Made by a program: the position numbers and the translations under genes
Part shown: in pieces, positions 11,267-53,008 of the stretch
Position numbering within the stretch: the stretch's first letter is position 1
Layout of the letters: each line of letters begins with the position of its first letter
Assembly (NCBI GenBank): GCA_002269645.1
Contig: NIVC01003858.1
Location: 1-64,000, forward strand
Length of the DNA: 64,000 nucleotides
Direction of reading: 5' to 3'
Source: Macrostomum lignano
Lineage: Eukaryota
Notes under the pieces: model-generated
Databases searched by the model: none
The model's input: the letters and a program-made list of their open reading frames with translations, nothing else
Told to the model about the DNA's origin: nothing

Positions 11267-11319
<53 letters not shown>

Positions 11320-11336
11320 CAGTTAGTTAGTTAGTC

Positions 11337-11379
<43 letters not shown>

Positions 11380-16299: not shown

Positions 16300-16443
16300 T
16301 GCCATCCTCAGTGACCATCATCTCCCTGCAGTGCCGCCCTCGGTGACCATCATCTCCCTTCAGTGCCATCCTCAGTGACCATCATCTCCCTTCAGTGCCA
16401 TCCTCAGTGACCATCATCTCCCTTCAGTGCCATCCTCAGTGAC
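16300..16443. repeat. 32-bp tandem repeat x ~4.5
   Basis: GCCATCCTCAGTGACCATCATCTCCCTTCAGT units. Confidence 0.9.
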
Positions 16444-16870
16444 ACTGATGTTGAAACTTCTTGTAAAGCTTCTCTGTATAGCGGCGGAGGTCATAAGAAG
16501 CATACAGACGAATATATTTCGGTGTGCTCTTGAAAACAAAAAACATTAGTTCGAGTAAAATGTTAACAGGTTTGTATTTTTAAACCAAAAACTTATTTTA
16601 AAAGTGCAAACTTTAGTTTTGGGTTAATTTGAAGTGAATTTTATTAGGGCAAAAAATATACCGATTAGGCACACCAACTAAAGGAAACCTAATCTTAACT
16701 TTTTTATTCTATCGATATTATTTTTAATAGATCAACCTGGCTTCTGCCCGTTCAGGTGTATGATACTGTACACACGCTCACACAGGGTGCACCGCGGCCC
16801 TTTGACTTTCTAATCGGTCACTGGTGTTTAATGTACTCATGTTGTAGCTGTCCATCAGCTCAAATCCAGC

Positions 16871-19057: not shown

Positions 19058-19095
<38 letters not shown>

Positions 19096-19196
19096 TATCA
19101 TCATCATCATCATCACTTTATCATTATCATCATCACTTTTATCATCATCATCATCATCATCATCACCATCATCATCATCATTATCATCATCACTTT

Positions 19197-19248
<52 letters not shown>

Positions 19249-22200: not shown

Positions 22201-22607
22201 GCCAGATTCTCTAAGAAGAGTGTCAGATTCTCTAAGAGTGCCAGATTCTCTAAGAGTGCCAGATTCTCTAAGAAGAGGCCAGATTCTCTAAGAAGAGTGC
22301 CAGATTCTCTAGGAGTGCCAGATTCTCTAGGAAGAGTGCCAGATTCTCTAAGAAGAGGCCAGATTCTAAGAAGAGTGCCAGTTTTTATATATCTAGATAG
22401 AAGGGTTTAGAAATGCATATGGTCGGGGAACTTTCGCGAACGTGGCATACTGGGGCCAATCCTGTTTCAATACACAAGCTAGCTCACTCACACATCCGAT
22501 GTCGAGTTGATGGCGCAGGTGACAAAATTCGCTCTGTTCGAACAGTAGTCCTTTAGTCCGGTCAGCATTGCCGACTGCAGCTTTGTCTGTTGGTTCTCCT
22601 GCTCCCA
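16871..22607 (-). CDS. Uncharacterised single-pass membrane protein (at least 5 exons, 377 aa recovered, 5' end unresolved): Cys-containing SEA-like ectodomain, TM helix, Lys/Ser-rich cytoplasmic tail
   Basis: Minus-strand exons 22607-22492, 21530-21394, 20199-20022, 18860-18483 and 17195-16871 join in one frame (phases 2,1,2,2; 1134 nt). Sequence WEQENQQTKLQSAMLTGLKDYCSNRANFVTC..GYPVNY..; TM VIVPIFVLGTLVLIIVALAL followed by RHHQTKQRRK; stop TGA. One donor is GC (CAG|GCAAGT). Confidence 0.78.
17390..18478. repeat. GGTTTGGCGCCCC-core minisatellite (~21-24 bp) filling an intron
   Basis: More than 40 degenerate units; source of the RFGAP/QVWRP ORFs. Confidence 0.96.
18900..19962. repeat. ~1.06-kb degenerate (ATC)n trinucleotide array, intronic
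   Basis: Direct reading; source of the poly-H/I/S ORFs. Confidence 0.97.
20330..21285. repeat. 17-bp minisatellite (GGCGCTCATTTTCCTGT) with higher-order blocks
   Basis: More than 50 units; a block of about 240 bp is repeated. Confidence 0.96.
21620..22381. repeat. 18/21-bp minisatellite (GATTCTCTAAG[AAG]AGTGCCA)
   Basis: About 37 units of two lengths. Confidence 0.96.
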
Positions 22608-22844
22608 CTGTATTTGTATAGAATTGTTTCTAGTCAATTTGAGCCACAAGTTTCACAGATTACACTACTGATTATAAGTGCGAGTAGCTAGTAAAGATTT
22701 TTTATATTATTTTAAAAACAATAGTGTTCAGTTTACAGAAAAAAAGCCAAATGCTGTGGGTTTGCATGGTTTCCCTGCCTGCATCAGTCAGTCTCACTGT
22801 TGGTCTGAGTTTCTGTCTCCGTACAAGCGTGTCTTAGTGTCGTA

Positions 22845-22861
22845 ATGTCTATCTGTTTTTG

Positions 22862-22892
<31 letters not shown>

Positions 22893-22973
22893 GTGTCTGT
22901 CTGTGTGTCTGTCTGTCTTTGTGTCTGTCTGTCTGTCTGTCTGTGTGTCTGTCTGTCTGTCTGTCTGTCTTTG

Positions 22974-23040
<67 letters not shown>

Positions 23041-23101
23041 ACGTGTGTCTGTCTGTCTGTCTGTCTGTGTGTGTGTCTGTCTGTGTGTCTGTCTGTCTTT
23101 G

Positions 23102-23144
<43 letters not shown>

Positions 23145-23161
23145 GTGTCTGTCTGTCTTTG

Positions 23162-23256
<95 letters not shown>

Positions 23257-23261
23257 ACGTG

Positions 23262-23312
<51 letters not shown>

Positions 23313-23417
23313 GTGTCTGTCTGTCTGTCTATCTGTCTGTGTGTCTGTCTGTGTGTCTGTCTGTCTGTCTATCTGTCTGTCTGTGTGTCTGTCTGTCTGT
23401 CTGTGTGTCTGTCTGTG

Positions 23418-23452
<35 letters not shown>

Positions 23453-23457
23453 ACGTG

Positions 23458-23520
<63 letters not shown>

Positions 23521-23581
23521 ACGTGTGTCTGTCTGTCTGTCTGTCTGTGTGTGTGTCTGTCTGTGTGTCTGTCTGTCTTTG

Positions 23582-23612
<31 letters not shown>

Positions 23613-23641
23613 GTGTCTGTCTGTGTGTCTGTCTGTCTTTG

Positions 23642-23736
<95 letters not shown>

Positions 23737-23741
23737 ACGTG

Positions 23742-23792
<51 letters not shown>

Positions 23793-23897
23793 GTGTCTGT
23801 CTGTCTGTCTATCTGTCTGTGTGTCTGTCTGTGTGTCTGTCTGTCTGTCTATCTGTCTGTCTGTGTGTCTGTCTGTCTGTCTGTGTGTCTGTCTGTG

Positions 23898-23932
<35 letters not shown>

Positions 23933-23937
23933 ACGTG

Positions 23938-23968
<31 letters not shown>

Positions 23969-23973
23969 ACGTG

Positions 23974-24006
<33 letters not shown>

Positions 24007-24018
24007 GCCTGTCTGTCA
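22845..24018. repeat. (TGTC)n microsatellite, ~1.17 kb, with a 480-bp internal duplication
   Basis: The variant pattern at 23041 recurs at 23521. Confidence 0.97.
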
Positions 24019-25861: not shown

Positions 25862-28800
25862 AACAAACAAGCTAAGCTACATGTATATATATTTATTTAA
25901 CAACCTGCAGGCTGCATGGCAGCCAATTGATATGGTGCAAGCTATAGAAATTGAATAGATTAATCGAGTAGTAGATAAGTACGAGAATAGAAGGACTGCA
26001 GCTGCAGATTGTAATGCATTGATGCACGAGTGGCCTTGGCTGACCTTAACAAAATGGACTTAAAATTAAAATAATACCAAAACTTACACATTTATTAAAA
26101 CAAAAATAAACAGTGTAAAGCAAGGTTTTTGCACTCGCATAAAATTAAACTTCTTTATTACAAGCTGTATAAAAATTAATCAAGTTAAGATGAACTATAG
26201 ATAACTATTTGCGAAGGATGTGCTGAGTTGTAAAGATAATAAAATTTAAATAGACATGCACTTATTAGTAGTTAACTTGCAGAAGAAAACGAGAAGCTCC
26301 CTCTGCCCCTCTGGTGCAGACTAGCCACACGGCATAGCCATAGGGCTAGGCTTATACGAAAAAGTAGTAACTAATTAAGTAATTCATTAATTTATTCAAG
26401 CAAGCTAATAATGCTAGGGGCTTAGGGCTAAGCGTTAGGGCCACTAAGCCCTAGGCCTAGGCCGCCTAGGCTAGCCTACCTAGGGGCAGGGCTAAGGCAT
26501 ATTCTATTGACTCTAATTTATACTTAATACTTCATCTCATAATAATTAATTAGTAACTCAAATAAGGTGTGAGCCTCAACCAATCAACTTATTATTATAG
26601 ACCCATCCAAGGCCCCACGGGCAGAGTAGCTTGACTGTAAAAACAGTGTAAAAGTGTTTGCCATTTGACTCTTGCACCACGATGTCGACCCTGGCGGCCT
26701 GGCCCTGGTTTGATTCTGGGTGCTTACATTAAAATGAATTGATTTTGGGGCTTCATGTAGAAAAAATTGGTCTAGGTGGCTAGGTTTCTAAGATTCGACC
26801 CACCCCATGAGAGCCAACCCCACAGAGTGATTTCAATGGACTAGGTGACTTGCACAGCTTGCAGGTGCATCCTATGCCCTAATCTTGCCTGCATCCTTTT
26901 CCCCAACCCAACCAACTGCCAGTAGACCTAATAGGCCAGGTCTAAAACAGTGAATATTCTTGACATTTTACCATGAGAAAGTTTTGAATTTCTATAGCCA
27001 TAGGGCCTATAATTTATGTCACATCATATATAATTTATGTATATCACATGTAGGCCTATGTCATATATATTGTCTAGTCACTCTAGGCCTAGTGTAGGGT
27101 ATAGCCTCAATTATATTAGATTAACAATAGAACTTGCAGTTATACAAATAAATATTTTTGCTTTAAATGTAAAAAACTATATTTATAATCTATAATACTA
27201 TAAAACTAGGTACAATTATCATGGTATTATTATAACATAATATAGCATAGGCCCTAACTATAGCCCATAATGATAATGATATTATCATAATAATGATAGT
27301 CAATGAATAGCAAAAATGAAGAAATATAGTGCGGTATAACAAATTAGCTTTGTAGCCTAGCTTATAACAGTCATATTCTTAAATAAAATAAGTGTTAATA
27401 TAGCTAAGCATACAAAAGTCATTTAATGCTAAAGCTAAATAAATATTCTTAAATAAAAGATGACATGAGCCCATTAGGCCTTTAGTATATAATTGCCAAA
27501 ATATCTATTTATCTTGTGCAATTGTTACATTAAAAAAACTTGTTCTAATAGTCATAGTGCCCATTGTGTACTAAAAGTTTTTATCAAAAGGCCTAGGGCC
27601 TAGGCCTATACTTTGGATCATGTTGAGTGCATGCTAAAATCAAATGTAAGACGAAAAAGCTATTAGACTAGGCAAACTGGCAAAGCCAGAGACAGTATCA
27701 TGGTTTCATTGAATGTCCTTAAAGATATAGGATACCAAAAGTGTAGGATACTAAAGATTTAAAAATATATATAATATATATAATATAAAATGCATTCTAT
27801 TTTAAATAACAAGTAAGCAATATTTATAAGAATATATATTTAAATAAATAAGAGTAGGGCCTATTAAGAATATTTATAAGAGTATAAGAGTCAAAGTGAC
27901 TTTCTTTGGCCACTGGCACTAGAATTAAATATATTATGTATAATGATATGTTATATGTTACGTTATGTTATATTAAATAATGTTTTAAATGGGCTTTTTA
28001 GCCAGATTTAATTATGCACAGCAAAAAAACTTTACATCCAATTTTAATGATATGTGTATTGTATCTGTAGATAAATAAAGGTAAATATCAACATGAAGTA
28101 TTATTTGAGTTGCCGATGCATTTCGTCCATTTGCATTAGGACATCGTCAGGGTCTTTTTATTGAGAAACAATTTGAACGAATATTCAGTATATATAGATA
28201 GTTGAGAGTAACAAGAGTAGTTGAATTGAGTTTTTAATTGATGGTTTAAAACTTGTACATAGTAATCAATTATTAATTATTATTATTATCAATTATTATT
28301 ATTATTATCAATTATATCAATTATCAAAAAAGAAGCAAAAGAAACAAACAAGCTAAGCTACATGTATATATATTTATTTAACAACCTGCAGGCTGCATGG
28401 CAGCCAATTGATATGGTGCAAGCTATAGAAATTGAATAGATTAATCGAGTAGTAGATAAGTACGAGAATAGAAGGACTGCAGCTGCAGATTGTAATGCAT
28501 TGATGCACGAGTGGCCTTGGCTGACCTTAACAAAATGGACTTAAAATTAAAATAATACCAAAACTTACACATTTATTAAAACAAAAATAAACAGTGTAAA
28601 GCAAGGTTTTTGCACTCGCATAAAATTAAACTTCTTTATTACAAGCTGTATAAAAATTAATCAAGTTAAGATGAACTATAGATAACTATTTGCGAAGGAT
28701 GTGCTGAGTTGTAAAGATAATAAAATTTAAATAGACATGCACTTATTAGTAGTTAACTTGCAGAAGAAAACGAGAAGCTCCCTCTGCCCCTCTGGTGCAG

Positions 28801-30814
28801 ACTAGCCACACGGCATAGCCATAGGGCTAGGCTTATACGAAAAAGTAGTAACTAATTAAGTAATTCATTAATTTATTCAAGCAAGCTAATAATGCTAGGG
28901 GCTTAGGGCTAAGCGTTAGGGCCACTAAGCCCTAGGCCTAGGCCGCCTAGGCTAGCCTACCTAGGGGCAGGGCTAAGGCATATTCTATTGACTCTAATTT
29001 ATACTTAATACTTCATCTCATAATAATTAATTAGTAACTCAAATAAGGTGTGAGCCTCAACCAATCAACTTATTATTATAGACCCATCCAAGGCCCCACG
29101 GGCAGAGTAGCTTGACTGTAAAAACAGTGTAAAAGTGTTTGCCATTTGACTCTTGCACCACGATGTCGACCCTGGCGGCCTGGCCCTGGTTTGATTCTGG
29201 GTGCTTACATTAAAATGAATTGATTTTGGGGCTTCATGTAGAAAAAATTGGTCTAGGTGGCTAGGTTTCTAAGATTCGACCCACCCCATGAGAGCCAACC
29301 CCACAGAGTGATTTCAATGGACTAGGTGACTTGCACAGCTTGCAGGTGCATCCTATGCCCTAATCTTGCCTGCATCCTTTTCCCCAACCCAACCAACTGC
29401 CAGTAGACCTAATAGGCCAGGTCTAAAACAGTGAATATTCTTGACATTTTACCATGAGAAAGTTTTGAATTTCTATAGCCATAGGGCCTATAATTTATGT
29501 CACATCATATATAATTTATGTATATCACATGTAGGCCTATGTCATATATATTGTCTAGTCACTCTAGGCCTAGTGTAGGGTATAGCCTCAATTATATTAG
29601 ATTAACAATAGAACTTGCAGTTATACAAATAAATATTTTTGCTTTAAATGTAAAAAACTATATTTATAATCTATAATACTATAAAACTAGGTACAATTAT
29701 CATGGTATTATTATAACATAATATAGCATAGGCCCTAACTATAGCCCATAATGATAATGATATTATCATAATAATGATAGTCAATGAATAGCAAAAATGA
29801 AGAAATATAGTGCGGTATAACAAATTAGCTTTGTAGCCTAGCTTATAACAGTCATATTCTTAAATAAAATAAGTGTTAATATAGCTAAGCATACAAAAGT
29901 CATTTAATGCTAAAGCTAAATAAATATTCTTAAATAAAAGATGACATGAGCCCATTAGGCCTTTAGTATATAATTGCCAAAATATCTATTTATCTTGTGC
30001 AATTGTTACATTAAAAAAACTTGTTCTAATAGTCATAGTGCCCATTGTGTACTAAAAGTTTTTATCAAAAGGCCTAGGGCCTAGGCCTATACTTTGGATC
30101 ATGTTGAGTGCATGCTAAAATCAAATGTAAGACGAAAAAGCTATTAGACTAGGCAAACTGGCAAAGCCAGAGACAGTATCATGGTTTCATTGAATGTCCT
30201 TAAAGATATAGGATACCAAAAGTGTAGGATACTAAAGATTTAAAAATATATATAATATATATAATATAAAATGCATTCTATTTTAAATAACAAGTAAGCA
30301 ATATTTATAAGAATATATATTTAAATAAATAAGAGTAGGGCCTATTAAGAATATTTATAAGAGTATAAGAGTCAAAGTGACTTTCTTTGGCCACTGGCAC
30401 TAGAATTAAATATATTATGTATAATGATATGTTATATGTTACGTTATGTTATATTAAATAATGTTTTAAATGGGCTTTTTAGCCAGATTTAATTATGCAC
30501 AGCAAAAAAACTTTACATCCAATTTTAATGATATGTGTATTGTATCTGTAGATAAATAAAGGTAAATATCAACATGAAGTATTATTTGAGTTGCCGATGC
30601 ATTTCGTCCATTTGCATTAGGACATCGTCAGGGTCTTTTTATTGAGAAACAATTTGAACGAATATTCAGTATATATAGATAGTTGAGAGTAACAAGAGTA
30701 GTTGAATTGAGTTTTTAATTGATGGTTTAAAACTTGTACATAGTAATCAATTATTAATTATTATTATTATCAATTATTATTATTATTATCAATTATATCA
30801 ATTATCAAAAAAGA
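25862..30814. repeat. Direct tandem segmental duplication, period 2481 bp (25862-28333 and 28343-30814) with a 9-bp junction insert
   Basis: The two copies look identical by eye; junction insert AGCAAAAGA at 28334-28342. Confidence 0.95.
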
Positions 30815-30900
30815 CCCTGACGATGTCCTAATGCAAATGGACGAAATGCATCGGCAACTCAAATAATACTTCATGTTGATATTTACCTTTATTTATCTAC
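30548..30900. mobile_element. 353-bp element with 93-bp perfect inverted arms (30548-30640 / 30808-30900) carrying hammerhead motifs; Penelope-like pLTR/retrozyme remnant. A truncated copy lies at 28067-28333
   Basis: Arms are exact reverse complements. Spacer contains an (ATT)n tract. Flanked by TCT on both sides. Confidence 0.7.
30815..30854 (+). ncRNA. Candidate minimal type I hammerhead ribozyme (additional copies on the - strand at 30594-30633 and 28113-28152)
   Basis: CC-CUGACGA-U-GUCC[uaaugcaaau]GGAC-GAAA-UGCA-UC-GG: conserved core, 4-bp stem II, palindromic AUGCAU stem III, UC cleavage site. Stem I has only 2 Watson-Crick pairs. Confidence 0.68.
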
Positions 30901-31462
30901 TCTTCATCAAGCGAGCCACTTTACCTGATTTCTATTGTATCTGTATTTTAATGTTATATATATATATAATGATAGTGGCCTAAAAGAGAGTCACTTAGTT
31001 GATAATCTAGATTATTTTTTTATCTGATATTTTTAACCTAGTCCTAATCATTGGATTTTAAAAGCACATATGTTAGCATATTTATAGTTGCTTTTAGTAC
31101 CAATTTTATTACTCTTTCAATGATGAATATACTATATACTATATTTATAACCATAATTATTGAAATACAACAATTAACTTTTGTATAATAGACTAAGCTA
31201 GACCTAACTACTTTTACTAGTAGAGTTATAGCTTTAAACATGGCTCTGGAAAGGTATAGTGTAGAGGTTTTAAGACAAAACATTTAGATTCAAATATGGT
31301 TAAAGGAATGCATATTTTTTATCTAGTATTATTGGCCACTTAGTAATTAAGACTTGAAGACTTTAAAAGAACAGTAGGAATGGATGAATGTTGCCAGTTT
31401 CAAAGCATTTTGAAAGGACCATATGCACAATTTTGTAAATTGCAGCATTACTGCCAGGCACA

Positions 31463-34412
31463 ATGGCTGGTCGCCCACCCAACAGCGATGATGGCACAGT
31501 GTTCAAGCTTGTTGTAGTGGGAAATGGTGGCGTTGGGAAAAGCGCTTTGACAATTCAGTACTTCCAGAAGATGTTTGTGCAAGATTATGATCCCACGATT
31601 GAGGACTCTTATATCCAGTTTAAGATGATTGATAACGAATGGTACTTGCTTGATGTGCTTGATACAGCAGGTAAGTTCGCTCTGATTTTTTGAAATATCA
31701 ATAGTTTAGTTGATAGTTGGCAAAGGTCACTAAGTGTGCACTGAAAACGTTACTATGATAAAAATCGCTGAAGAGTCATCGCAAACAACTCACTAGTGAC
31801 CTCGATCTAGGAGTCTAGGGACTCTAGGCCGACTCCTGAAGCCTTTTGACGGCTCAAACGACTGCAATGCAACGGGTTGGCAACTGTTGAGTCATGGACA
31901 TGAGCGCATAACGTGAGTTGCAGAATCGTAAAAGGGTTGCTGCAGACGTCCTAAATTGACTTTTGACGACTTGTACCGTGACGTCTCTTCGTTTAGAGCC
32001 GTTAAAAGTCACTTCTTTCCTACGGTATTTTACCTGTGTTACCTGTAACGACTCTGAGGCGATGCAAGTGGCTCTGGGACGCTTCCTGGCCTAGATAGCT
32101 ACCGTTTTCATCGGGCAGTCATTGACTTGATTTGCTGCCACAGCACACGTACTTTTACAATAAAAAATTCAGGGTCACTGTACCAAATTTGCATACTTCG
32201 GGGTTAACTGTCACTTTGTGGTTGTACATGCTGGTCTAAATCTGTTCTAATCTGACATTGAACTCATTATTAATCTGTGATGACAACTTTGATGCCAAAA
32301 ACCTAGGATAATTAGCATTTATATCAACGATTTGCAATGACTTACCTCCAGGACAAGAGGAGTTCTCAGCCATGCGAGAGCAGTACATGCGCAAAGGCGA
32401 CGGCTTTCTGTTAGTCTATTCCGTTACTGATCGAAAAAGTTTCGAAGATATTCGACATTTTCATACGCAAATTTTGCGCGTTAAAGATCGCGATAATTAT
32501 CCAATGATTCTACTGGCTAACAAGGTGGATATCGTGCACCTGAGGCAGGTGTTTGAGGACGAGGGCAAAGCCCTGGCAAGTCAACTTAAAGTGAGTTCGT
32601 TAGATTAAATATTTCCTCATCTTAATTGAATCAGTCTGTGACTGACTGCGTGCCATAGAGAGAAGAGGGAGAGAGGCGAGATGAGAGAAGAGAGAGAAAA
32701 GGGGGAGAGGCGAGATGAGAGAAGAAAGAGGAAGGTGGGGGAGAGGCGAGATAAGAGAAGAAAGAGGAAGGTGGGGGAGAGGCGAGATGAGGGAAGAAAG
32801 AGGAAGGTGGGGGAGAGGCGAGATGAGGGAAGAAAGAGGAAGGTGGGGGAGAGGCGAGATGAGGGAAGAAAGAGGAAGGTGGGGGAGAGGCGAGATGAGG
32901 GAAGAAAGAGAAAGGGGGAGAGGCAAGATAAGAAAGGAAAGAGGAGGGGGTGAGAGACGAGTTGAGTGAGGAAAGGGGGAGAGGATAGGAGAGGCGAGAT
33001 AAGAGAGGAGGAGAAAGAGACAAGAGAGCTGAGAAGAAAAACATTGAGCGGGCGGGGTTGCTATTGTGATGTTTCCCGGACCCGAGGGCCGGATAGAGAG
33101 GCTTTGCGGGCCGCATGTGGCTTGCTGACCTCAAATTTTGACAGAAATAATAGTTAATAGAAGTAGCAGTAGTAATAGTTTACTGGCTCAGAAAAACTTT
33201 TCTGTTCTGCAAGCATAAGTTGATGTATTTGATAGTAGGAATTTTTTCATTTCAACTACGACTATATAGTCTGTCTAAACTGCAGTTTAACCTATCAAAT
33301 GTAATGAGCTAATATTGTTAAACTAATGTGCAAATTATGTTAGAATTTGGCTGCTTGAATTCACTTATCGCTGAGATCAAAGCTACTCGTAACAAATTGT
33401 TTGTGCAGAAGAAATGTTTATTATAAACTGTTGAGTGCTTTTTCGGCAGAAGCCACGCTTTTCTTGGCAAACCGGAAGTTGGCCCTACTAGCTTTTGCGA
33501 AAAGAAAACTTAGATACCTGCAATATAGAAGGATTGGTGCTTGGTCTTGGTGCTTCTTAGCTTTTAATAATCTAGTCAGGAAGGTGTAGTTCAGTTAACT
33601 GAATAACTGGGTTTCCGGCTGACCTGGCTTTCTTGCAACTACTGCATTTAATACAGATAACAGATGTCCTGTAGTGTTAATTATAGTGTTAACTTTTATT
33701 TGAAAATAATGTAAGTCATGTCGGAATAGGAGTGCTGAAATATTTCATACACCACAAAGAATTACCCATCAAGCTAATAAAAATTTCCTATCGAGGCCTT
33801 AACAAACGGCTATTAAACCTCAAAATCGCTCATCAAAGCCACTTAAAATCGCCGATAAAAGCCCCAAGAATCGCCCGTCAAAGCCCCAACAATCGTCCAT
33901 CAAAGCCCCAACAATCGCCCGTCAAAGTCCTAAGAATCGCCAATCAAAGCCCTAAGAATCGCCAATCAAAGTCTCAAAAATTACCCGTCAAAACCCCAAG
34001 AATCGCCAATCAAAGTCTCAAAAATTACCCGTCAAAACCCCAAGAATCGCCAATCAAAGTCTCAAAAATTACCCGTCAAAACCCCAAGAATCGCCAATCA
34101 AAGTCTCGAGAATTACCCGTCAAAACCCCAAGAATCGCCAATCAAAGTCTCGAGAATTACCCGTCAAAGCCCCGAGAATCGCCCGTCAAAGCTCCAACGA
34201 TCGATCATAAAAATCTCAAGAATCGGTTATCGAACCCCCGCCCTCAGATCCAGTACATCGAGACCAGCGCCAAAGATCCGCCATTCAATGTTGATGAAGC
34301 GTTCAACACAATTGTACGAATTGTTCGAAATCAGCCACGCGAGGCGGCACCGGCGAAAGAGAAAAAACGGCGCAGAGGCGCGGGGCGCAAACTCAAATGC
34401 GAGCTCATGTAA
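31463..34412 (+). CDS. MRAS: M-Ras (R-Ras3) GTPase, copy 1, 3 exons, 203 aa
   Basis: Exons 31463-31670, 32352-32590 and 34248-34412 (GT-AG; 612 nt). Motifs [46 protein letters not shown] (M-Ras diagnostic), polybasic tail and CaaX CELM. Confidence 0.95.
31740..32060 (+). mobile_element. Dispersed MITE-like repeat, copy 3 (shortened; MRAS copy 1 intron 1)
   Basis: Shares end blocks with 10330-10790. Confidence 0.65.
32645..33030. repeat. 36-bp purine-rich minisatellite (GGGGGAGAGGCGAGATGAGGGAAGAAAGAGGAAGGT)
   Basis: Direct reading; MRAS copy 1 intron 2. Confidence 0.92.
33800..34240. repeat. Degenerate ~22-bp minisatellite (AAGAATCGCC..TCAAAG..) at the 3' end of MRAS copy 1 intron 2
   Basis: Direct reading. 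Confidence 0.85.
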
Positions 34413-35948
34413 ATCTGGTTGCTAGGCAAAAATATGTGTAAATAAGCCAGTAAATTCACCAGCCTGACAATAACCCTTAATTAGCATTACATTGCGGCTT
34501 TTTGTTGTTTATTTACAGTGAAAAAAGACGTTAAAACCCTATTATTCTACTGCCTACCTTTTAGACAGCGTATCTAACTTTATTAATATTATTGTATTTG
34601 TTAATTTTGTCTAACCTTATTCAATGATATCTGGATAGGTAAATTTGAACTCGAATTTTTTTTAGTTTGTTTGATTTTTAAACTTTTATTTATTTTTGTG
34701 TAGCGTTAAGTGCGCTTTTTTGCCAGTTTATTTTAATCCCATGAATTTTATTAAACTATCTATTGTATTTTAACATGCTCATTTGGTCGCTTTTACCGTT
34801 TTTAGTGGTATTTGGAACTTTTTGGTGCCATAAAAATGCGTGTATTTTTTAACTAATAATGTCACGTAAATAATTTTCGAATTCTGTGTATACTACTTGA
34901 ACCTAGGATGGATATAAGTAGTATGCCAAGAATAATATCTACAAGAAATTGATTAGATTAGCAGCGCCGCCTACTAATATTGACTGCTAAAACTGATTGG
35001 CTTTTCAACCCTGCTTTCCATATTTAAATACCATTGTTTTTAAACGTAACAAGTTTTTTACGTTTGTTTCGTTTGTGTGTGGCTTCCTAAAATTGTCTTA
35101 GTGAATGAATTCAGCTCAATGTTTTCATAGAACAAGTGTTGGTTTTTAATTTAGCTTGTAGCATGGAACTAACGGGTAGCGATTTTATTGCTTGTTCCGT
35201 CTATGTGTTATATTCTTTGCGAGTATATGTGTTTTTAATGTTATTCTCCATGTTGGAATTTGCTCATGGTTATATAGACATCTATTCTGCCAATGTTCTT
35301 ATTTACTCATTAGTAGGCGGGAAGATTATTAAGCTTAAAACTGCAATGTTTAACAGAAGATCGTAAGCCATATTTGACTTCTGCGCAGCAAAGTGACTGT
35401 TTGACATTTATGTGCTCTAATGAAATGCACTAATTAAGGGTAGCAAACTTATTTGTTACAAATTCAGCTTTAAATATAAAAATTATAGATATCTAAATTT
35501 CGTCCAAGCTTTCTGTTGTTGTTGCTTTCTTGTTTATGATATTTGATAAATAAGTTGTAGGATGAATTTTTATTTAATATTCATATTAAGTAGGCTGGGA
35601 AGCGCGACCCCAGCTGGTCGCACCCATGAGAAGGCCCAGGCCCAAGGCACAGAGAGTGTACATGCCTGACGATTAGAAGTCACAAGGCCGCTGTACACCC
35701 TGTGTGAGCGTGTGAACGAGTGCCGTGCCTGCGTACAGTGTTGGCGCGCTTGTTGGCGTGTGGCGTGTTCAGGAGTCAGCCCTCAATCCTCGTGTGATGG
35801 TATATTTTAGAAGTGTAAGATATCCTTTAAAATCCCCTACAGTGTTCCTCATTCTTGGGTCTTTGTAGCATATGCATAGTTGTAGGCAAAACTGAGATAA
35901 TTTCTAAGAATATTCGTCTTCCAAATTGATGCATTACTGCCAGGCGCA

Positions 35949-38900
35949 ATGGCTGGTCGCCCACCCAACAGCGATGATGGCACAGTGTTCAAGCTTGTTG
36001 TAGTGGGAAATGGTGGCGTTGGGAAAAGTGCTTTGACAATTCAGTACTTCCAGAAGATGTTTGTACAAGATTATGATCCCACGATTGAGGACTCTTATAT
36101 CCAGTTTAAGATGATTGATAACGAATGGTACTTGCTTGATGTGCTTGATACAGCAGGTAAGTTCGCTCTGATTATTTGAAATGTCAATAGTTTAGTTAGT
36201 TGGCAAAGGTCACTCAGTGTGCACTGAGAACGTTACTGTGATACGAATCGCTAGAGTAATTGCAAATAACTCACTAGTGACTAACGACTCTATAAACTAC
36301 TCTAGAGGCTTTTAAACTGCTCAAACGACTGCAATGCAACGGAGAGGCGACTTGAGTGATGGTCGCATCAATTGAGCTGTAGATCTGTAGGAGCCACAAA
36401 ATGTCGTCCAATAATCGTGTTAGACCTTTACTTTCTATTAACTTCAATCCACTAAAGTTGTTATAAATGCGAATGAGATTCAAATTCATAAACTGATGCG
36501 GATGCGCTTTAGATGCAACTCGGTGTTTCTAAAGCGACTCTGGCCCCAGAGTCATTAAAGAAACGCCCCAGAGTCGCAGACAATAAAACGTCCCAAATTG
36601 ACTCTTGGTGACATCTCATCGTTTTAGAGTCGTCTAAGAGTCACTTACCTATTTTACCTGTGTAACCTGCAACGACTCTTGGCGACGCAAGTGACTCTGA
36701 GACGCCTCTTGGCCTAGGTACCGTTTTCATTATGCAGTCATTGTTTTGGTTCTCTGGCACAGTACGCACTGTGACTGTGCACCATGTTCGTGCTTAGGGG
36801 TCACCTATGTGATTGTTTATACTGTTCTGTTCTAATCTGAACGTGCCGTTACTACTTTGTTATGTCTTTGCAGGTCAAGATGAGTTCTCTGCCATGCGAG
36901 AGCAGTACATGCGCAAAGGCGACGGCTTTCTGTTAGTCTATTCCGTTACTGATCGAAAAAGTTTCGAAGATATTCGACATTTTCATACGCAAATTTTGCG
37001 CGTTAAAGATCGCGAACATTATCCAATGATTCTACTGGCTAATAAGGTGGATATCGTGCACCTGAGGCAGGTGTTTGAGGACGAGGGCAAAGCCCTGGCA
37101 AGTCAACTTAAAGTGAGTTCGTTGGATTAAATACATTTCATCTTATGAAATTAGCTTATAATTATAGTAAGTTTGGAGTACAGGTTGGCTGTGGTACAGT
37201 ATGTAGTACGCAAGGAAAGGAACGTCGTTAGAATATCTCTGGGAGAATTCTGCTACTACTCTTATTTAAGTACACACGTTTACGAAACAAGGCGCTACAA
37301 ACACACCCTCTGAGAACAAAGTAAAGGAAGTGTGAACAAAACAATGTACGGTAGAGAAAACTGATCAGACAGGTTCAATAATTTTAATCAATGTATGCGC
37401 AGCAAACTAAGCACTGCAACATCAACCGAGTCCGATGCGAGGGTGTAGCTGGTTTTATACGATCGATTGACACCACTGAAGGCTTGCTGTTGGTTTCTAA
37501 CGTGAATTTTGTCTGGTGTCTGTCTAAAGTCATACGTGGGTACATGCATGCAGCCAAAGCAGACGGAAGTTGAAGGACGGAGGCGCGTTCGTGCATAGTT
37601 GGGTGTAAGGAAAAAAACAGCTGGTGCAGGCTTGTAAACAGCTCCTTGGCAGTGGACCAATGACTGTCTCGTCCCCGAAAATATGCATCTCGCGGAGCAC
37701 AACAGGTAGCTGCTGGAGCCAGTCCTTTCTGCGTACTCTCAACCCAACCTTCAGCGTCCGATAGATACTCAGCGATGCCATTCGCTCTCGGATATTTTAG
37801 GTTGGTGCGCGAGTGTAATAAAAAATTCCGAGCAGTATCGTCAAACTCTGCATGAGCTCCGCGCGGAACTGCCAGCCCTGGTCACTCGTCACGACCGTCA
37901 ATGGTGGGCCGAACGGCGAAATCCTGGATTCTAGAAAGTGCGGCTGACTTGGCGACGATGTCGGGTGGCTTCAAATCCAGCGCGAATACGCGTCGACCAT
38001 CGTGAGCAAGTAGCGAGGCCTTGGACTGACATCGGTAGCCGTGACAACCTGTCTTACACTGCTGACATTAGGCCATCAATTTTAGGATATCGACGATAAC
38101 CATGTCCAGACAAAAGAAACGATAAATACAAGCGTAATGAGCCGTTGAGTAGCCTTGCTTCAATGGTGTGCGAACGAATGCAACGAATCGAACACGGCGT
38201 AGGTTTGTCTACTAGACAAAGACGCACCGCAGCGGGCAGTCCTTGATGCCGGCCCATGTCGAAGTTGCTAAAACCACCTGTTTAAGAATCGGTCTCCGGG
38301 CTCTAACTGTGCCCAAGCGACGACTGGCAGGTCCACGCATTGCGGAATGTCAGATTTGAGCCGAACAGTAGCTATTGGTTGGTCCTAGGCGGGGTAGACC
38401 AGCTGTTGTTATAGCGCGTCGGCCACGATGTTGTCTTTGGATAGTTAGAGTTGCTGCCGGTCAGAGAAACACCCTTTCCTATTCTCGAACACTCCGATGA
38501 TGGGTTTGTGATCGCAGAACATGGAGGTCTGTTGATCCTGGATCATGTACTTCTGTCTTGACCGCGGAAAAGTAGGGAGTAGCTCTCAGCCTGCTGCTTC
38601 TGTATTGGATAGCTTGTGTAAGTAGAAAGCCAATAGTGAAGACTGCCCAGCTACTACCTGGTTGAAAGCTTCTTCAATGGCGGTGGCGCTGAAATCTTTT
38701 GTGACTGTAAACGGCTCTTGAGATGCCTTCCAAGCGCCTTCGTATCGACTTGTCTAAATGAAAGAAGCAGTGACGAGCTGTCGTGGCGGGACGGCGTTAT
38801 CGGCATAGTTGGGAATGCGCCGCTGGTAAAAAAAACATTCCGTGGTAGCGTTGCAATGATTGATAATCAGTGGGAAACTCGAGAGTTTTAGCGGCCGAAT

Positions 38901-39492
38901 GCTGTCGGAAGCGACGAGGTTGCCAAGAAACTGCACTGAGTCGCGAAAGAGCTGGCGCGTCGCAGAATCGACGCTTAAACCTTTGTCGCTAAAGTGTCGC
39001 AGCATGCATAGCTTTCACGTGATCTTGGTGCTTTTCTTGCGACTGGCTATATACCAGGATGTTTTAAATGCATTGCGTTACGAACGGAAGCTCGCGGAAG
39101 ATGGAGTCTACGTACCGTTGGAACGTATTAGCAGCGTTTCGGCGGCCGAATTTCATTCGCAGGTATTCAAAAGAATCTAGCCGGTACAAATAGCCGTTTT
39201 GTTTCAATGTCTTTGTCTGCCATCGGGACGAAGTGCTAGGCCTTGTTTAGTGGTAGGCTCTGTCTGTGTTTATCAACCCCCAAGAATCGGTAGTAAAACA
39301 TCTCAATAATCGAACCCCCACCCTCAAATCCAATACATCGAGACCAGCGCTAAAGACCCGCCATTCAATGTTGATGAAGCCTTCAGCGCAATTGTACGAA
39401 TTGTCCGAAATCAGCCACGCGAGGCGGTGCCGGCGAAAGAGAAAAAACGGCGCAGAGGCGCGGGGCGCAAACTCAAATGCGAGCTCATGTAA
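35949..39492 (+). CDS. MRAS: M-Ras copy 2 (tandem paralogue), possibly splice-defective: exon 3 acceptor reads AA instead of AG
   Basis: Exons 35949-36156, 36874-37112 and 39328-39492 are colinear with copy 1 and individually intact. Acceptor is ccctcAA|ATC at 39326-39327 versus ccctcAG|ATC in copy 1. Switch II reads GQDEF. Confidence 0.72.
36222..36690 (+). mobile_element. Dispersed MITE-like repeat, copy 4 (MRAS copy 2 intron 1)
   Basis: Same blocks as the other copies. Confidence 0.7.
37380..39010 (-). mobile_element. Decayed Ty3/Gypsy LTR-retrotransposon pol remnant (RT, RNase H, integrase) in MRAS copy 2 intron 2
   Basis: Minus-strand fragments in Gypsy order: [27 protein letters not shown]; RNase H-like [18 protein letters not shown]; integrase W.QQLP.VL and SIDRIKPA. 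Many stops and frameshifts. Confidence 0.8.
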
Positions 39493-41183
39493 ATCTGGTT
39501 GCTAAGATGGGAAAGATGGGTAAATAATCCAGTAAATTCACCAGCCTGACAAAAAACTTCAATAGGCATTAAATAGCTTTTTTGTCGTTTAGGGGAAAAA
39601 TACGTTAAAACCTCTATTATGCTACTGCCTACCTTTTGGGCAGCGTCTCTACGTTTATATACATTGTTTTTGTCATTGTCGAATTTTATAGCAGGCTTTT
39701 TGCCAGTTTATTGTATCCCATCAATTTTATTAAGTTCTCTATTGTCTTTTAATTTTGCTCATCATACCAAACAATCCTTTTCTCTTTTACAAATTATAAA
39801 AACAGCATATCTGTATTATTTATTCGGAAAATAGTCTAAAATTGACCATCTTTGGACGAGAAAATCCCCATGATCCCAGCCCCAGCTGCAGCGGCAACAG
39901 TAACTTTCGTGATGATGAAGTTCATTTATTGAATTCTGTGTATACTACTTCAGAATATCACTGAATATGAGTAGTATGCTTGGATTAAAATCTACCAGAA
40001 ATCAATTAGAGATTAGCTCTGCCTACTAATAGAATGGAAAAACTGATTGCTGATCATCAAGCCCTGATTTATATATTTAAATACCATTGTAGCTATTTTT
40101 ATGCCGTATTGTTAACATCATCAATGCAAAGATGCACGAATTTTGTCTCAATGCTTTCATAGAAAAAGGGTTGCTTTTTAAAATAGCATGAAGCCAACAG
40201 GTAGTCATGCTATTGTTTGTTCTGTGTCTGTATAGGTGTGATATAATATTTTTTATATTTGTTATATTTTTATTGTCTATATGCAGTTTTGAATTGGCTC
40301 GACTTGGTAAAAAATGCACTAATTAAGGGTACCAAACTTATTCGCTACAAATTCAACTGCAAATATAAATATTTGATAGCTAATTTCGTCCCAGCTTTTT
40401 GCTGTTGTTATTGTTGTTTTCCGAATATGCCTCTGTCTTAAAAATTTGAGAGATTAGTTGTTTTATTGTTCTTATTAAAAGGCTACGAATAGTAGTGCGG
40501 CTACTATATTATAATACATAGTACTCGTATTAGTACAAAGCAATTGTAGTATTTGAGCGTAGTTCATATAGCAGCACAATATACCAATATACATGCCTTA
40601 TTGTATGTATATATGTAACTGCATATCAATTATAGGAAAATCTTACTTATAGGGTTCCTGCGCCTCTGTCCAATAAGTGGAACAATACATGTAGAGCCGC
40701 GAGAGTTCAGAAATTATTTATGAGCAATTGAGCAGTAATCTCATTCTCACACTACACTATACGCATGAACAATATAGCTGGTATGCACCGAAGGTACGAC
40801 AGCGAAACACGAAGAACCTTTTCCTTTTCTTGGGCCTGTTACCATATCATTTATTAGTTCATATGATATAGAAAAATATTGTTTAGAATATCTTCCTTAG
40901 CTAAGCAGATATTTATTGTGCAAAAATTAGTTATTATGTATGAATTCCGTGGTAGAATTTTTATTCTGATATATTCCTGAGCGAAATTCATTACCTATTT
41001 AGGTCTGTAACAGGGTGTAGGTTAGGGTTTAAATTCAGGTTTAGAATACTTTTGTAGGGGTTAATGAAATCGCTGACAGTATTATATATGCTGTCATTAG
41101 GCCTACTTCCAGGTTATAACTTAATCCCTAATTCTTAACTCCTATTCCTAAACCCTTAACGACATGTTTATCATAACTGCCTC

Positions 41184-42159: not shown

Positions 42160-42712
42160 TGTCTTTAAAGCTCTGGATGGTTAACTGACTGTCTTAAAGC
42201 TGCCATCAAAGCTCTGGATGGTTAACCACTGAACCACTGGCTTGTACAGCTCTGGATGGTTAACCACTGAACCACTGGCTTGTACAGCTCTGGATGGTTA
42301 ACCACTGGCTTGTACAGCTCGGGATGGTTAACCACTGGCTTGTACAGCTCTGGATGGTTAACCACTGGCTTGTACAAGCTCTGGATGGTTAACCACTGGC
42401 TTGTACAGCTCTGGATGGTTAACCACTGGCTTGTACAGCTCTGGAAGGTTAACCACTGGCTTGTACAGCTCTGGATGGTTAACCACTAGCTTGTACAGCT
42501 CTGGATATTTAACCACTGGCTTGCACAAGCTCTGGATGGTTAACCACTGGCTTGTACAGCTCTGGATGGTTAACCACTGGCTGTTAAAGCTCTGGATGGT
42601 TAACCACTGCTTGTACAGCTCTGGATATTTAACCACTGCTTGTACAAGCTCTGGATGGTTAACCACTGGCTGTTAAAGCTCTGCATGGTTAACCACTGGC
42701 TCTTAAAGCTCT
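42160..42712. repeat. 30-bp minisatellite (CTGGATGGTTAACCACTGGCTTGTACAGCT)
   Basis: About 18 units. Confidence 0.95.
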
Positions 42713-45478: not shown

Positions 45479-45571
<93 letters not shown>

Positions 45572-45696
45572 GTCTTTCTGTGTCTGTCTGTCTGTCTGTC
45601 TGTCTGTCTTTCTGTCTGTCTGTCTGTCTGTCTTTCTGTTTCTGTCTTGTGTCTGTCTGTCTTTCTGTTTCTGTCTTGTGTCTGTCTGTCTGTCTT

Positions 45697-45789
<93 letters not shown>

Positions 45790-51369: not shown

Positions 51370-53008
<1,639 letters not shown>

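What the first reader, a model, noticed from the sequence alone, without database searches (positions are those of the whole stretch)
30815..30854. Minimal hammerhead ribozyme motifs arranged tail-outward in a perfect inverted repeat (Penelope/retrozyme-like)
Seen: CUGACGA-U-GUCC-(10 nt)-GGAC-GAAA-UGCA-UC|GG, with predicted cleavage after 30852. It is present on + here, on - in the opposite arm (30594-30633) and on - in the duplicated segment (28113-28152). An AATAAA and an (ATT)n tract lie directly upstream of the motifs. Known: Penelope-like elements and metazoan retrozymes carry minimal type I hammerheads with an extra nucleotide after CUGANGA and a palindromic stem III (here AUGCAU) that cleave as dimers, and their pLTRs are often inverted. 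Inference: a non-autonomous ribozyme-bearing retroelement in which transcripts from either strand would carry a ribozyme and a 93-bp dsRNA stem. Caveat: stem I has only 2 Watson-Crick pairs, so this copy may be decayed or may need a trans/dimer partner.
Basis: partly seen in the sequence, partly recalled or inferred. Interest (0 to 1): 0.8.

Follow-up and report, generated by a model that had tools for sequence, protein, structure and literature searches.

The report
Hammerhead-like motif in a recent inverted duplication
A 40-base sequence with every conserved letter of a hammerhead self-cutting RNA really is there in three identical copies, but they are one sequence copied by a very recent local rearrangement, most likely a dead leftover of a Penelope-type jumping gene, an ordinary feature of invertebrate genomes.

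Summary
CCCUGACGA-U-GUCC-(10 nt)-GGAC-GAAA-UGCA-UC|GG lies at 30815-30854 (+), and identically on (-) at 30594-30633 and 28113-28152. The first two sit in a perfect 93-nt inverted repeat with a 167-nt spacer.

The third copy is not independent. It belongs to a 100% identical 2,472-bp tandem duplication, and the duplication junction and the inversion junction share one breakpoint, with 7 nt of microhomology. So there is a single sequence and no covariation to test.

The motif has the full hammerhead core plus three hallmarks published for Penelope-like-element (PLE) and "dimeric" type I hammerheads:
- an extra U after A9
- a G10.1-C11.1 pair
- a one-pair helix III capped by the palindromic tetraloop UGCA

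Such a match is rare by chance (about 0.001 per window). However, helix I has only 2 pairs and no Rfam hammerhead model matches. A model built from six published animal hammerheads finds exactly these sites, but only at E≈0.2.

The window contains no short tandem (retrozyme) array, no RT or GIY-YIG remnant, and no other copy of the arm.

Best reading: an inactive relic of a PLE-type hammerhead, multiplied by a recent rearrangement. A chance motif remains a serious rival. Interest is low.

The parts
30815..30854 (+). Hammerhead-like motif, plus-strand copy. CC / CUGACGA / U / GUCC-loop10-GGAC / GAAA / UGCA / UC^GG. Predicted cut after 30852.
   Evidence: CM R2, built from six published animal hammerheads, hits exactly these coordinates: 11.6 bits, E=0.19, all pairs standard.
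30594..30633 (-). Identical motif on the minus strand, in the left arm of the inverted repeat. Predicted cut after 30596.
28113..28152 (-). Identical motif on the minus strand. This is the copy carried by the first unit of the 2.48-kb tandem duplication, so it is not an independent occurrence.
30548..30640 (.). Left arm of the perfect 93-nt inverted repeat. The outer end lies 48 nt beyond the minus-strand cut site.
   Evidence: (pair I2).
30808..30900 (.). Right arm of the inverted repeat. The outer end lies 48 nt beyond the plus-strand cut site. The first 7 nt (30808-30814, AAAAAGA) overlap the end of the duplicated unit, which is microhomology at the inversion junction.
30641..30807 (.). 167-nt AT-rich spacer. 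It contains the (ATT)n/ATCAATT tract 30740-30806 and, on the minus strand, AATAAA at 30643-30638.
   Evidence: (family D3).
25862..28333 (.). Tandem duplication, unit 1. 2,472 bp, non-coding, about 33-36% G+C.
   Evidence: 100% identity over 2,472 bp; no ORF of 120 aa or more, no Pfam domain.
28334..28342 (.). 9-nt filler AGCAAAAGA at the tandem junction. It resembles the preceding CAAAAAAGA.
28343..30814 (.). Tandem duplication, unit 2. It ends at the same nucleotide of the unit as unit 1 (...CAAAAAAGA^).

Best explanation
The motif is most likely a degenerate, catalytically weak or dead hammerhead of the Penelope-like-element / 'dimeric type I' kind. It would be a relic of a non-autonomous or 5'-truncated PLE-derived insertion in the AT-rich intergenic DNA about 560 bp upstream of an M-Ras-like gene.

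Its three copies come from very recent local events, not from three insertions:
1. A head-to-head pair, 3' ends outward, of a roughly 260-nt copy and a 93-nt copy. This arose either by priming on both target strands, as the Anolis PLE protein does in vitro, or by snap-back copying at a 7-nt microhomology.
2. A 2,472-bp tandem duplication whose right breakpoint sits at the base of that hairpin.

What is shown: the sequence, the perfect repeat, the shared breakpoint, and the motif's agreement with published PLE and dimeric hammerhead features.

What is inferred: descent from a PLE, the order of events, and inactivity. If transcribed, the dominant RNA structure would be the 93-bp hairpin (a possible small-RNA source), not the ribozyme.
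For: Motif features:
- Complete core C3-A9, G12-A15.1, U16.1, C17.
- Extra U after A9, G10.1-C11.1, and a palindromic UGCA between A15.1 and U16.1. These are the features PMC4209133 gives as arguing against randomness.
- The same helix III design as axolotl Ax330, GAAA-CAUG-UC.
- A9-U-G10.1 reads AUG, as in the active Anolis PLE PAc. There the cut is 26 nt after the start codon; here it is 27 nt.
- PAc and the Drosophila virilis PLE have helix I of about 3 and 2 pairs.

Statistics:
- Chance rate about 0.001 per window for the feature set.
- CM R2, built only from published hammerheads, lands on exactly the three sites, with the whole core aligned and no non-standard pair.

Geometry:
- Two copies with 3' ends outward meet at their truncated 5' ends. 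This is the pattern described for PLE insertions.
- It fits PAc nicking and extending both strands.
- Dual opposite-strand motifs 100-700 bp apart are reported in Schistosoma mansoni.
- Most published PLE hammerheads are solitary, without an ORF.
Against: - No Rfam hammerhead hit at any threshold tried.
- R2 gives only E=0.19, and a spurious hit scores higher. The N79-only model gives 4 bits.
- Helix I is 2 pairs and helix II is 4 pairs, against 4-5 and 6-8 in typical PLE motifs. Those are the minimum values a chance hit would show.
- The hammerhead fold is not the MFE, and the predicted dimer does not form helix III.
- No RT/EN remnant, no second family member, and no target-site duplication beyond TCT.
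- The inverted copy and the tandem copy share one breakpoint with microhomology and a filler. A replication or repair template switch in unique DNA explains this without any transposon.
- The array is exactly two units minus 9 nt. That fits a segmental duplication, not reverse transcription with random ends.
Confidence: 0.5

Rival explanations
1. The motif is a chance match in unique AT-rich intergenic DNA. A single recent replication or repair accident produced both the tandem duplication and the 93-nt inverted templated copy. The accident would be fork stalling at the (ATT)n/A-run, followed by microhomology-mediated template switching or snap-back synthesis. That accident turned one fortuitous hammerhead-like string into three.
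For: - Both novel junctions start after the same nucleotide (...CAAAAAAGA^).
- There is a 7-nt AAAAAGA overlap at the inversion junction.
- The 9-nt filler resembles the adjacent sequence.
- All copies are 100% identical.
- No other copy in the window or in the searched collections.
- No Rfam hit, and CM R2 gives E=0.19 amid noise hits.
- Helices I and II are at the minimum lengths.
- At 0.001 per window, about ten chance hits are expected per Gb.
Against: - Three non-core PLE/dimeric hallmarks coincide (extra U, G10.1-C11.1, palindromic tetraloop). The tetraloop version appeared 0 times in 3000 shuffles.
- Animal genomes with PLEs carry thousands of real motifs, which would outnumber chance hits.
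- The motif sits 48 nt from the arm ends, with its 3' side outward on both arms, as PLE termini would.
Confidence: 0.3
2. One reading: an active non-autonomous ribozyme-bearing retroelement (retrozyme-like). Its transcripts would self-cleave after 30852, probably as dimers through the AUGCAU helix III, and would circulate as RNA. The 2,481-nt spacing of the two minus-strand motifs would define a unit.
For: - The core is intact in all copies.
- A palindromic helix III is suited to dimerisation.
- Two sense motifs lie 2,481 nt apart on the minus strand.
- 100% identity implies a very recent origin.
- Retrozymes are thought to derive from PLE pLTRs.
Against: - There is no 150-450-bp tandem array with the motif.
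- Helix I has 2 pairs, and no loop 1-loop 2 contact is possible.
- The array length (two units minus 9 nt) indicates a DNA-level duplication.
- One of the two minus-strand motifs would be locked in the 93-bp hairpin.
- There are no family members.
- Published minimal PLE hammerheads cleave poorly even as dimers.
Confidence: 0.08
3. The 353-bp structure (30548-30900) is a foldback/MITE-type DNA transposon with 93-bp terminal inverted repeats. The hammerhead-like string would be incidental to its arms.
For: - Perfect long terminal inverted repeats and a short AT-rich interior.
- TCT on both flanks, a possible 3-bp duplication.
- A Tc1/mariner-type DDE remnant elsewhere in the window shows DNA transposons are present.
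Against: - A TCT match is expected by chance about 1 time in 64.
- There is no second copy in 64 kb.
- The arms are far longer than typical MITE repeats.
- The microhomology shared with the duplication breakpoint is unexplained by this model.
Confidence: 0.07
4. The perfect tandem duplication, the perfect inverted copy, or both are assembly artefacts. The real locus would hold one motif.
For: - 100% identity over 2,472 bp and 93 bp in a very repeat-rich region.
- PLE-type tandem/inverted structures are known to trouble assemblies.
Against: - The junctions have a filler and microhomology typical of real events.
- This cannot be checked without reads.
Confidence: 0.05

Closest known systems
Minimal hammerheads of Penelope-like elements (Cervera & De la Pena 2014, PMC4209133). 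Example with shown cleavage: Poseidon_Ac of Anolis carolinensis (PAc; PMC11167929).
   Same: - Type I order of elements and a full core.
- An unpaired nucleotide between A9 and G10.1. Here, as in PAc, A9-U-G10.1 reads AUG.
- A G10.1-C11.1 pair.
- Palindromic 15.2-16.2/loop 3.
- A very short helix I (PAc about 3 pairs, Drosophila virilis 2 pairs).
- The cut is 27 nt after the AUG (PAc 26 nt).
- Occurrence as opposite-strand pairs 100-700 bp apart.
- Tail-outward inverted truncated copies.
   Different: - Helix II is 4 pairs with a 10-nt loop, not 6-8 pairs.
- The AUG is followed by UCC UAA, so no ORF.
- No RT/GIY-YIG ORF or remnant nearby.
- No demonstrated family and no covariation.
Dimer-dependent type I hammerhead of amphibian satellite/retrozyme repeats (axolotl HHR_Amex1 / Ax330; PMC7229834).
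   Same: - Helix III is a single A15.1-U16.1 pair capped by a palindromic tetraloop (CAUG there, UGCA here).
- Helix II has 4 pairs.
- The host DNA has low G+C.
   Different: - Ax330 has a 6-pair helix I and loop 1-loop 2 contacts, and sits in 330-bp head-to-tail arrays of tens of thousands of copies.
- Here helix I has 2 pairs, loop 2 is enlarged, there is an extra U, and there is no short tandem array.
Schistosoma mansoni Sm1 hammerhead (the N79 derivative, sequence in PMC12550524).
   Same: - The same helix II, GUCC/GGAC.
- CAAAU in loop 2 next to GGAC.
- The same core.
   Different: - A covariance model of N79 alone gives the window motif only 4 bits.
- Helices I and III are unlike.
- Other animal hammerheads use other helix II sequences, so the shared GUCC/GGAC is weak evidence.
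Microhomology-mediated template-switch rearrangements (snap-back / fold-back inverted duplications with templated fillers). From general knowledge, not tested against a database.
   Same: - A shared breakpoint for two junctions.
- 7-nt microhomology.
- A 9-nt filler resembling neighbouring sequence.
- Perfect identity of all copies.
   Different: This describes how the copies arose, not what the motif is. It is compatible with either a relic or a chance motif.

Membership tests
Hammerhead ribozyme (any type) | Conserved core: C3-U4-G5-A6-N7-G8-A9, G12-A13-A14, A15.1-U16.1, H17 | tested here: met
   CUGACGA 30817-23, GAAA 30843-46, U 30851, C 30852.
Hammerhead ribozyme (any type) | Helix II closed by a loop, with a G10.1-C11.1 base pair | tested here: met
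   GUCC/GGAC gives 4 Watson-Crick pairs, with G30825-C30842. The hairpin is part of the MFE fold.
Hammerhead ribozyme (any type) | Helix I able to hold the substrate strand (usually 4-6 pairs or more) | tested here: not met
   Only CC/GG pairs. The next positions are A.C and G.A, in both the plus and minus contexts.
Hammerhead ribozyme (any type) | Recognised by curated covariance models (Rfam Hammerhead_1, _3, _II, HH9, HH10) | tested here: not met
   No hit at gathering score. None at E<=10 on 4 kb or on 121 nt. Minimal PLE variants are probably outside these models.
Hammerhead ribozyme (any type) | Similarity to published animal hammerheads in sequence plus structure | tested here: inconclusive
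   CM R2 (coral, mussel, two axolotl, N79, Poseidon_Ac) hits exactly the three sites over model positions 9-44 of 52, with no non-standard pair. The score is only 11.6 bits, E=0.19 per window, and one spurious hit ranks higher.
Hammerhead ribozyme (any type) | Compensatory changes in helices among relatives | tested here: inconclusive
   The three copies are 100% identical products of one rearrangement. No relative was found in the window, metagenome or viral collections.
Hammerhead ribozyme (any type) | Site-specific self-cleavage | not testable with these tools
   Needs in vitro transcription. Predicted energetics are unfavourable: hammerhead fold +1.4 against MFE -6.1 kcal/mol, and the cofold does not form helix III.
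PLE minimal hammerhead (PMC4209133) | [quoted passage not shown] | tested here: met
   U30824. Also present in Poseidon_Ac.
PLE minimal hammerhead (PMC4209133) | Palindromic 15.2-16.2 and loop 3 | tested here: met
   A-UGCA-U, that is AUGCAU.
PLE minimal hammerhead (PMC4209133) | Long helix II (6-8 pairs) and helix I of 4-5 pairs | tested here: not met
   Helix II has 4 pairs and helix I has 2. The D. virilis variant has a 2-pair helix I.
PLE minimal hammerhead (PMC4209133) | Located in the pseudo-LTR of an element with an RT + GIY-YIG ORF, or in a genome-wide consensus family derived from one | tested here: not met
   No ORF of 120 aa or more in 24.3-32.6 kb. No Pfam RT/GIY-YIG in stop-to-stop segments of 24.3-28.4, 30.8-31.5 and 34.5-64 kb. 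Genome-wide families are not testable here.
PLE complex insertion (PMC8557442) | Inverted 5'-truncated copy abutting the 5' end of a direct copy, so that 3' ends face outward | tested here: inconclusive
   The geometry fits: arms meet at 30807/30808, and both end 48 nt after the cut. A snap-back copy at the 7-nt microhomology gives the same picture.
PLE complex insertion (PMC8557442) | Partial tandem (truncated copy + full copy) forming a pseudo-LTR | tested here: not met
   The tandem is two equal 2,472-bp units with a 9-nt filler, which is a whole-segment duplication.
Metazoan non-LTR retrozyme (PMC7229834) | Head-to-tail tandem repeats of about 150-450 bp, each with a type I hammerhead | tested here: not met
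   None of the many tandem arrays in the window contains a hammerhead descriptor hit. The motifs are 2,481 nt apart or inverted.
Metazoan non-LTR retrozyme (PMC7229834) | Canonical helix I (6 pairs) with loop 1-loop 2 tertiary contacts | tested here: not met
   Helix I has 2 pairs and no loop 1.
Metazoan non-LTR retrozyme (PMC7229834) | Expression as linear and circular RNAs | not testable with these tools
   No transcript data.
MITE / foldback DNA transposon | Terminal inverted repeats flanked by a target-site duplication, and many copies | tested here: inconclusive
   The 93-bp repeats are present. Only TCT is shared by the flanks. No other copy in 64 kb.

The most novel reading that the evidence does not exclude
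A young, still mobile non-autonomous PLE derivative whose hammerhead is placed in both arms of a perfect hairpin. Duplex formation (and Dicer-type processing) would compete with ribozyme folding on the same RNA, giving a ribozyme gated by its own antisense copy, next to the promoter region of an M-Ras-like gene. A variant of this reading: the 2.48-kb unit bounded by two sense hammerheads is an unusually large retrozyme-like unit.
Probability: 0.04. Interest if true: 0.55.

Novelty: new member of a known kind. Interest (0 to 1): 0.2.

Why it matters
If it is real, it adds one more solitary PLE-type hammerhead to the thousands already described in animal genomes, so it matters little by itself.

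Two points are mildly useful. First, the locus shows how a single recent rearrangement can make one motif look like a three-copy 'family'. Second, its A9-U-G10.1 = AUG arrangement parallels the one PLE hammerhead with shown activity.

The perfect 93-bp hairpin about 560 bp upstream of an M-Ras-like gene could be a source of small RNAs or a fragile site. That is a question about the inverted repeat, independent of the ribozyme.

Tried and rejected
- **Rfam.** Searched at gathering score on the window, and at E<=10 on 4 kb and on 121 nt. No hammerhead hit.
- **Single-sequence CM of N79/Sm1.** The motif was not among hits in the window and scored 4 bits locally. The model is dominated by N79's long helices I and III, so this was a poor test.
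- **MAFFT alignments of 5 or 4 published hammerheads.** N79 or Ax330 were misaligned, so I did not use them. I used the 6-sequence alignment A2 instead, accepting that Poseidon_Ac is one column out of register in helix II.
- **Argument from the Sm1-type helix II GUCC/GGAC.** The analytic chance is 6e-5 per window. I downgraded it because coral, mussel and axolotl hammerheads use other helix II sequences, which makes the argument post hoc.
- **Searches for relatives.**
  - Two metagenome scans and one viral scan with motif and arm patterns found 0.
  - Sensitive blastn of the arm, the element and the unit against the rest of the window found only noise.
  - A literature full-text search for the motif strings found only unrelated primers.
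- **Locating the source genome.** An exact look-up of the GPCR ORF found nothing on record. The ANKUB1-like protein has no hit above 53% identity (Capitella, Dimorphilus, Apostichopus). The organism is therefore an unsampled bilaterian invertebrate, and no further DNA from it could be fetched.
- **Type III or type II topology.** Rejected by eye: there is no G-rich partner upstream to close a helix I hairpin.
- **PLE rolling or 'more-than-unit' reverse transcription as the origin of the 2.48-kb tandem.** Rejected. The array is exactly two units minus 9 nt, and the inverted piece is internal to the unit rather than its 3' end.
- **tRNA/SINE origin.** No tRNA-like sequence in the window.
- **Supplements.** Those of PMC4209133 and PMC8557442 are not held as text.

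Full report
**1. The observation**

The sequence is exactly as described. On the plus strand:
- CC at 30815-16
- CUGACGA at 30817-23
- an extra U at 30824
- GUCC at 30825-28, a 10-nt loop UAAUGCAAAU at 30829-38, then GGAC at 30839-42
- GAAA at 30843-46
- UGCA at 30847-50
- UC at 30851-52
- GG at 30853-54

By the hammerhead rule the cut would fall after C17 (30852). Identical strings lie on the minus strand at 30633-30594 and 28152-28113.

The first two sit in a perfect inverted repeat: arms 30548-30640 and 30808-30900, 93 nt, 100% complementary, with a 167-nt spacer. The motif's 3' side faces outward on both arms, and each arm ends 48 nt after the cut.

The (ATT)n-rich tract 30740-30806 precedes the plus copy. 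A minus-strand AATAAA (30643-30638) lies 8 nt before the minus copy.

**2. The three copies are one sequence**

A self-comparison shows that 25862-28333 and 28343-30814 are 100% identical over 2,472 bp, separated by a 9-nt filler AGCAAAAGA. The 28113-28152 motif is simply the copy carried in unit 1.

Both new junctions start after the same nucleotide of the unit:
- unit 1: ...ATCAAAAAAGA | AGCAAAAGA | AACAAAC...
- unit 2: ...ATCAAAAAAGA | CCCTGACG...

The last 7 nt of the unit (AAAAAGA, 30808-30814) are also the first 7 nt of the inverted arm. That is microhomology at the inversion junction. The filler resembles the preceding CAAAAAAGA.

The array is two whole units minus 9 nt. This is what a DNA-level segmental duplication gives, and it would be a coincidence of less than 1% for reverse transcription with random ends. 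Everything is 100% identical, so the events are very recent, or in the worst case assembly errors. The window therefore offers no sequence variation with which to test base pairing.

**3. Is the motif more than chance?**

I wrote a descriptor scan and ran it on dinucleotide-preserving shuffles of the window, both strands.

| Descriptor | Hits per shuffled window |
|---|---|
| Relaxed: core, helix II >=3, U16.1-H17 | 1.1-1.3 |
| Plus helix II >=4, G10.1-C11.1, palindromic interior of helix III | 0.007 |
| Plus helix I >=2 | 0.0013 |
| Plus the extra nucleotide | 0.001 |
| Tetraloop version | 0 in 3000 |

The real window has only this one independent hit under the relaxed descriptor. The full feature set is thus unlikely in a given window, but about ten chance examples would be expected in a 1-Gb genome. 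Statistics alone do not settle it.

**4. Model-based tests**

Rfam 15 gives no hammerhead match. This holds at gathering score on the window, at E<=10 on 4 kb, and at E<=10 on 121 nt.

A covariance model of the Schistosoma-derived N79 ribozyme alone (sequence from PMC12550524) does not rank the motif in the window. Locally it gives 4 bits.

I then built a second model (R2) from six published animal hammerheads:
- coral Amil224, mussel Mg353, and axolotl Ax353 and Ax330 (PMC7229834 supplement)
- N79
- Poseidon_Ac, the PLE of the lizard Anolis carolinensis, called PAc below (PMC11167929 supplement)

R2 lands on exactly 30815-30854 (+), 30594-30633 (-) and 28113-28152 (-). It aligns the whole core, helix II, helix III and the inner two pairs of helix I, with no non-standard pair. 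However, the score is only 11.6 bits, E=0.19 for the window, and a spurious match at 16423-16449 scores 12.8 bits. The result is consistent with a hammerhead but not significant.

**5. Comparison with the literature**

Cervera & De la Pena 2014 (PMC4209133) list features that emerged among PLE hammerheads beyond their search descriptor:
- a conserved G10.1-C11.1 pair
- palindromic 15.2-16.2 and loop 3

All three are present here. The same paper reports pairs of motifs 100-700 bp apart on opposite strands in Schistosoma mansoni. It also reports that most motifs are solitary, and that the D. virilis variant has a 2-pair helix I.

The axolotl Ax330 hammerhead has the same helix III design, GAAA-CAUG-UC, a single pair with a palindromic tetraloop. 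It needs a dimer to cleave well.

In PAc the hammerhead spans the tandem junction as ...CCU CUGAGGA U GCCUGC...GUGGGC GAAA CG UC^AGG. Several PAc features bear on this locus:
- A9-U-G10.1 is the ORF start codon.
- The cut is 26 nt after it.
- Helix I is about 3 pairs.
- C3G and G8C mutants abolish cleavage.

In the window, A9-U-G10.1 also reads AUG (30823-25) and the cut is 27 nt after it. But the next codons are UCC UAA, so there is no ORF.

Against membership, helix II has 4 pairs rather than 6-8, and helix I has 2 rather than 4-5. Those are the minimum values a chance hit would also show.

**6. Surroundings**

The host is a bilaterian invertebrate with no close relative in the protein collection. 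An ANKUB1-like protein at 43216-44136 has its best hit at 53% identity, to Capitella.

The locus lies in a 7-kb AT-rich (33-36% G+C), non-coding block. That block sits between a RanBP2-like nucleoporin gene (about 2.5-14 kb) and an M-Ras-like GTPase gene whose first coding exon starts at 31463. The inverted repeat ends 562 bp upstream of that ATG.

Tests for a link to a known element were negative:
- No RT or GIY-YIG remnant was found in stop-to-stop segments of 24.3-28.4, 30.8-31.5 or 34.5-64 kb.
- No tRNA-like sequence.
- No other copy of the arm, the 353-bp structure or the 2.47-kb unit elsewhere in the window.
- None of the many tandem arrays carries a hammerhead descriptor hit, so the defining arrangement of animal retrozymes is absent.

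**7. Folding**

The helix II hairpin forms in the MFE structure. The full monomer hammerhead fold costs +1.4 kcal/mol, against an MFE of -6.1.

The predicted homodimer pairs the helix II strands and the UGCA of loop 2 between molecules, rather than forming the AUGCAU helix III.

The plus-strand transcript of 30540-30910 folds into the 93-bp hairpin at -186 kcal/mol. With the hammerhead helices enforced, no extension of helix I appears in either strand context.

On either strand, any transcript crossing the repeat would lock one sense motif against its antisense copy.

**8. Interpretation**

Two processes can produce the tail-outward inverted pair.

(a) PLE-type insertion. PLE insertions are described as partial tandems, often with an inverted 5'-truncated copy at the 5' end (PMC8557442). 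The PAc protein nicks and extends both target strands and starts reverse transcription tens of nucleotides downstream of the hammerhead. This would give two truncated copies with the same 3' end facing outward, as seen here.

(b) Snap-back or template-switch copying. A 3' end ...AAAAAGA pairs with TCTTTTT (30634-30640) 167 nt upstream and copies 86 nt. The same fragile end also seeds the tandem duplication.

The shared breakpoint, the microhomology and the filler fit (b) directly. They also fit (a) followed by breakage at the base of the hairpin. I cannot separate the two without other copies or an empty allele.

My best estimate is that the motif descends from a PLE-type hammerhead (about 0.5-0.6). 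This rests on three points. Real motifs outnumber chance ones in PLE-bearing animal genomes. Three non-core hallmarks coincide. The geometry fits. I judge it not to be a working ribozyme in this context.

A chance motif multiplied by a rearrangement remains a serious rival (about 0.3). The active-retrozyme reading is unlikely (about 0.08).

**9. Verdict**

If real, this is an unremarkable new member of a known kind. Interest is low.

The decisive tests are a genome-wide search with the 93-nt arm, long-read validation of the junctions, and a cleavage assay with C3G/G8C controls.

Noticed in passing
window 31437-35037 and 35923-40090: The M-Ras-like GTPase gene (Pfam Ras exons at 31463-31693 and 32372-32608) is present twice in tandem. 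The second copy has exons at about 35901-36176 and 36813-37127, and DNA identity between copies is 74-96%. Homology starts at 31437, only 26 nt before the ATG, so the hairpin-bearing upstream region is not part of this older duplication.
   Followed up: partly
window 2537-13840: A RanBP2-like nucleoporin gene. It has an N-terminal TPR exon (2537-4858), three RanBP1 domains and RanBP2-type zinc fingers. Two large exons (9045-10262 and 11531-12802) are near-identical for about 250 codons, which suggests a recent internal exon duplication.
   Followed up: partly
window 61984-62241 (+): A remnant of a Tc1/mariner-type transposase (Pfam DDE_3, E=3.6e-7). It shows DNA transposons in this genome.
   Followed up: no
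window 50146-50592 (-): A 149-aa open frame (…GDRVRLRNLRRDDRKGGKMRYTWSQQVYIV…) that looks by eye like the C-terminal part of a retroelement integrase. It gave no Pfam hit.
   Followed up: partly
window 28780-28990 (and its duplicate 26299-26510): A G+C-rich island inside the AT-rich duplicated unit. It is made of CCTAGG/GGCCTAGGCC palindromes and TTAGGG-like units (GGCTTAGGGCTAAGCGTTAGGGCC...) and can fold back on itself. Its origin is unknown.
   Followed up: no
window 1664-2333, 4771-6014, 13855-15294, 17400-24017, 42232-42712, 45478-46740, 55251-61260: The density of minisatellite arrays is extraordinary. Examples are a 23-nt unit over about 4.5 kb at 56.3-61.2 kb in two blocks, 24-nt x52, 25-nt x44, (TGTC)n over 1.2 kb, and (TCA)n over 1 kb. 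Many create long spurious ORFs.
   Followed up: no
window 43216-44136 (+) and 51370-52452 (+): An ANKUB1-like ubiquitin-plus-ankyrin protein, with best hits of only about 53% identity to annelid and echinoderm proteins. Also an intronless rhodopsin-family GPCR ending in an (RE)n tail. The source organism appears unsampled in the protein collection.
   Followed up: partly
window 30829-30838 versus 30846-30851: Loop 2 of the motif contains AUGCA, and helix III is AUGCAU. The self-complementary UGCA therefore occurs twice within 20 nt and offers competing intra- and intermolecular pairings. The predicted dimer uses the loop 2 copy.
   Followed up: partly
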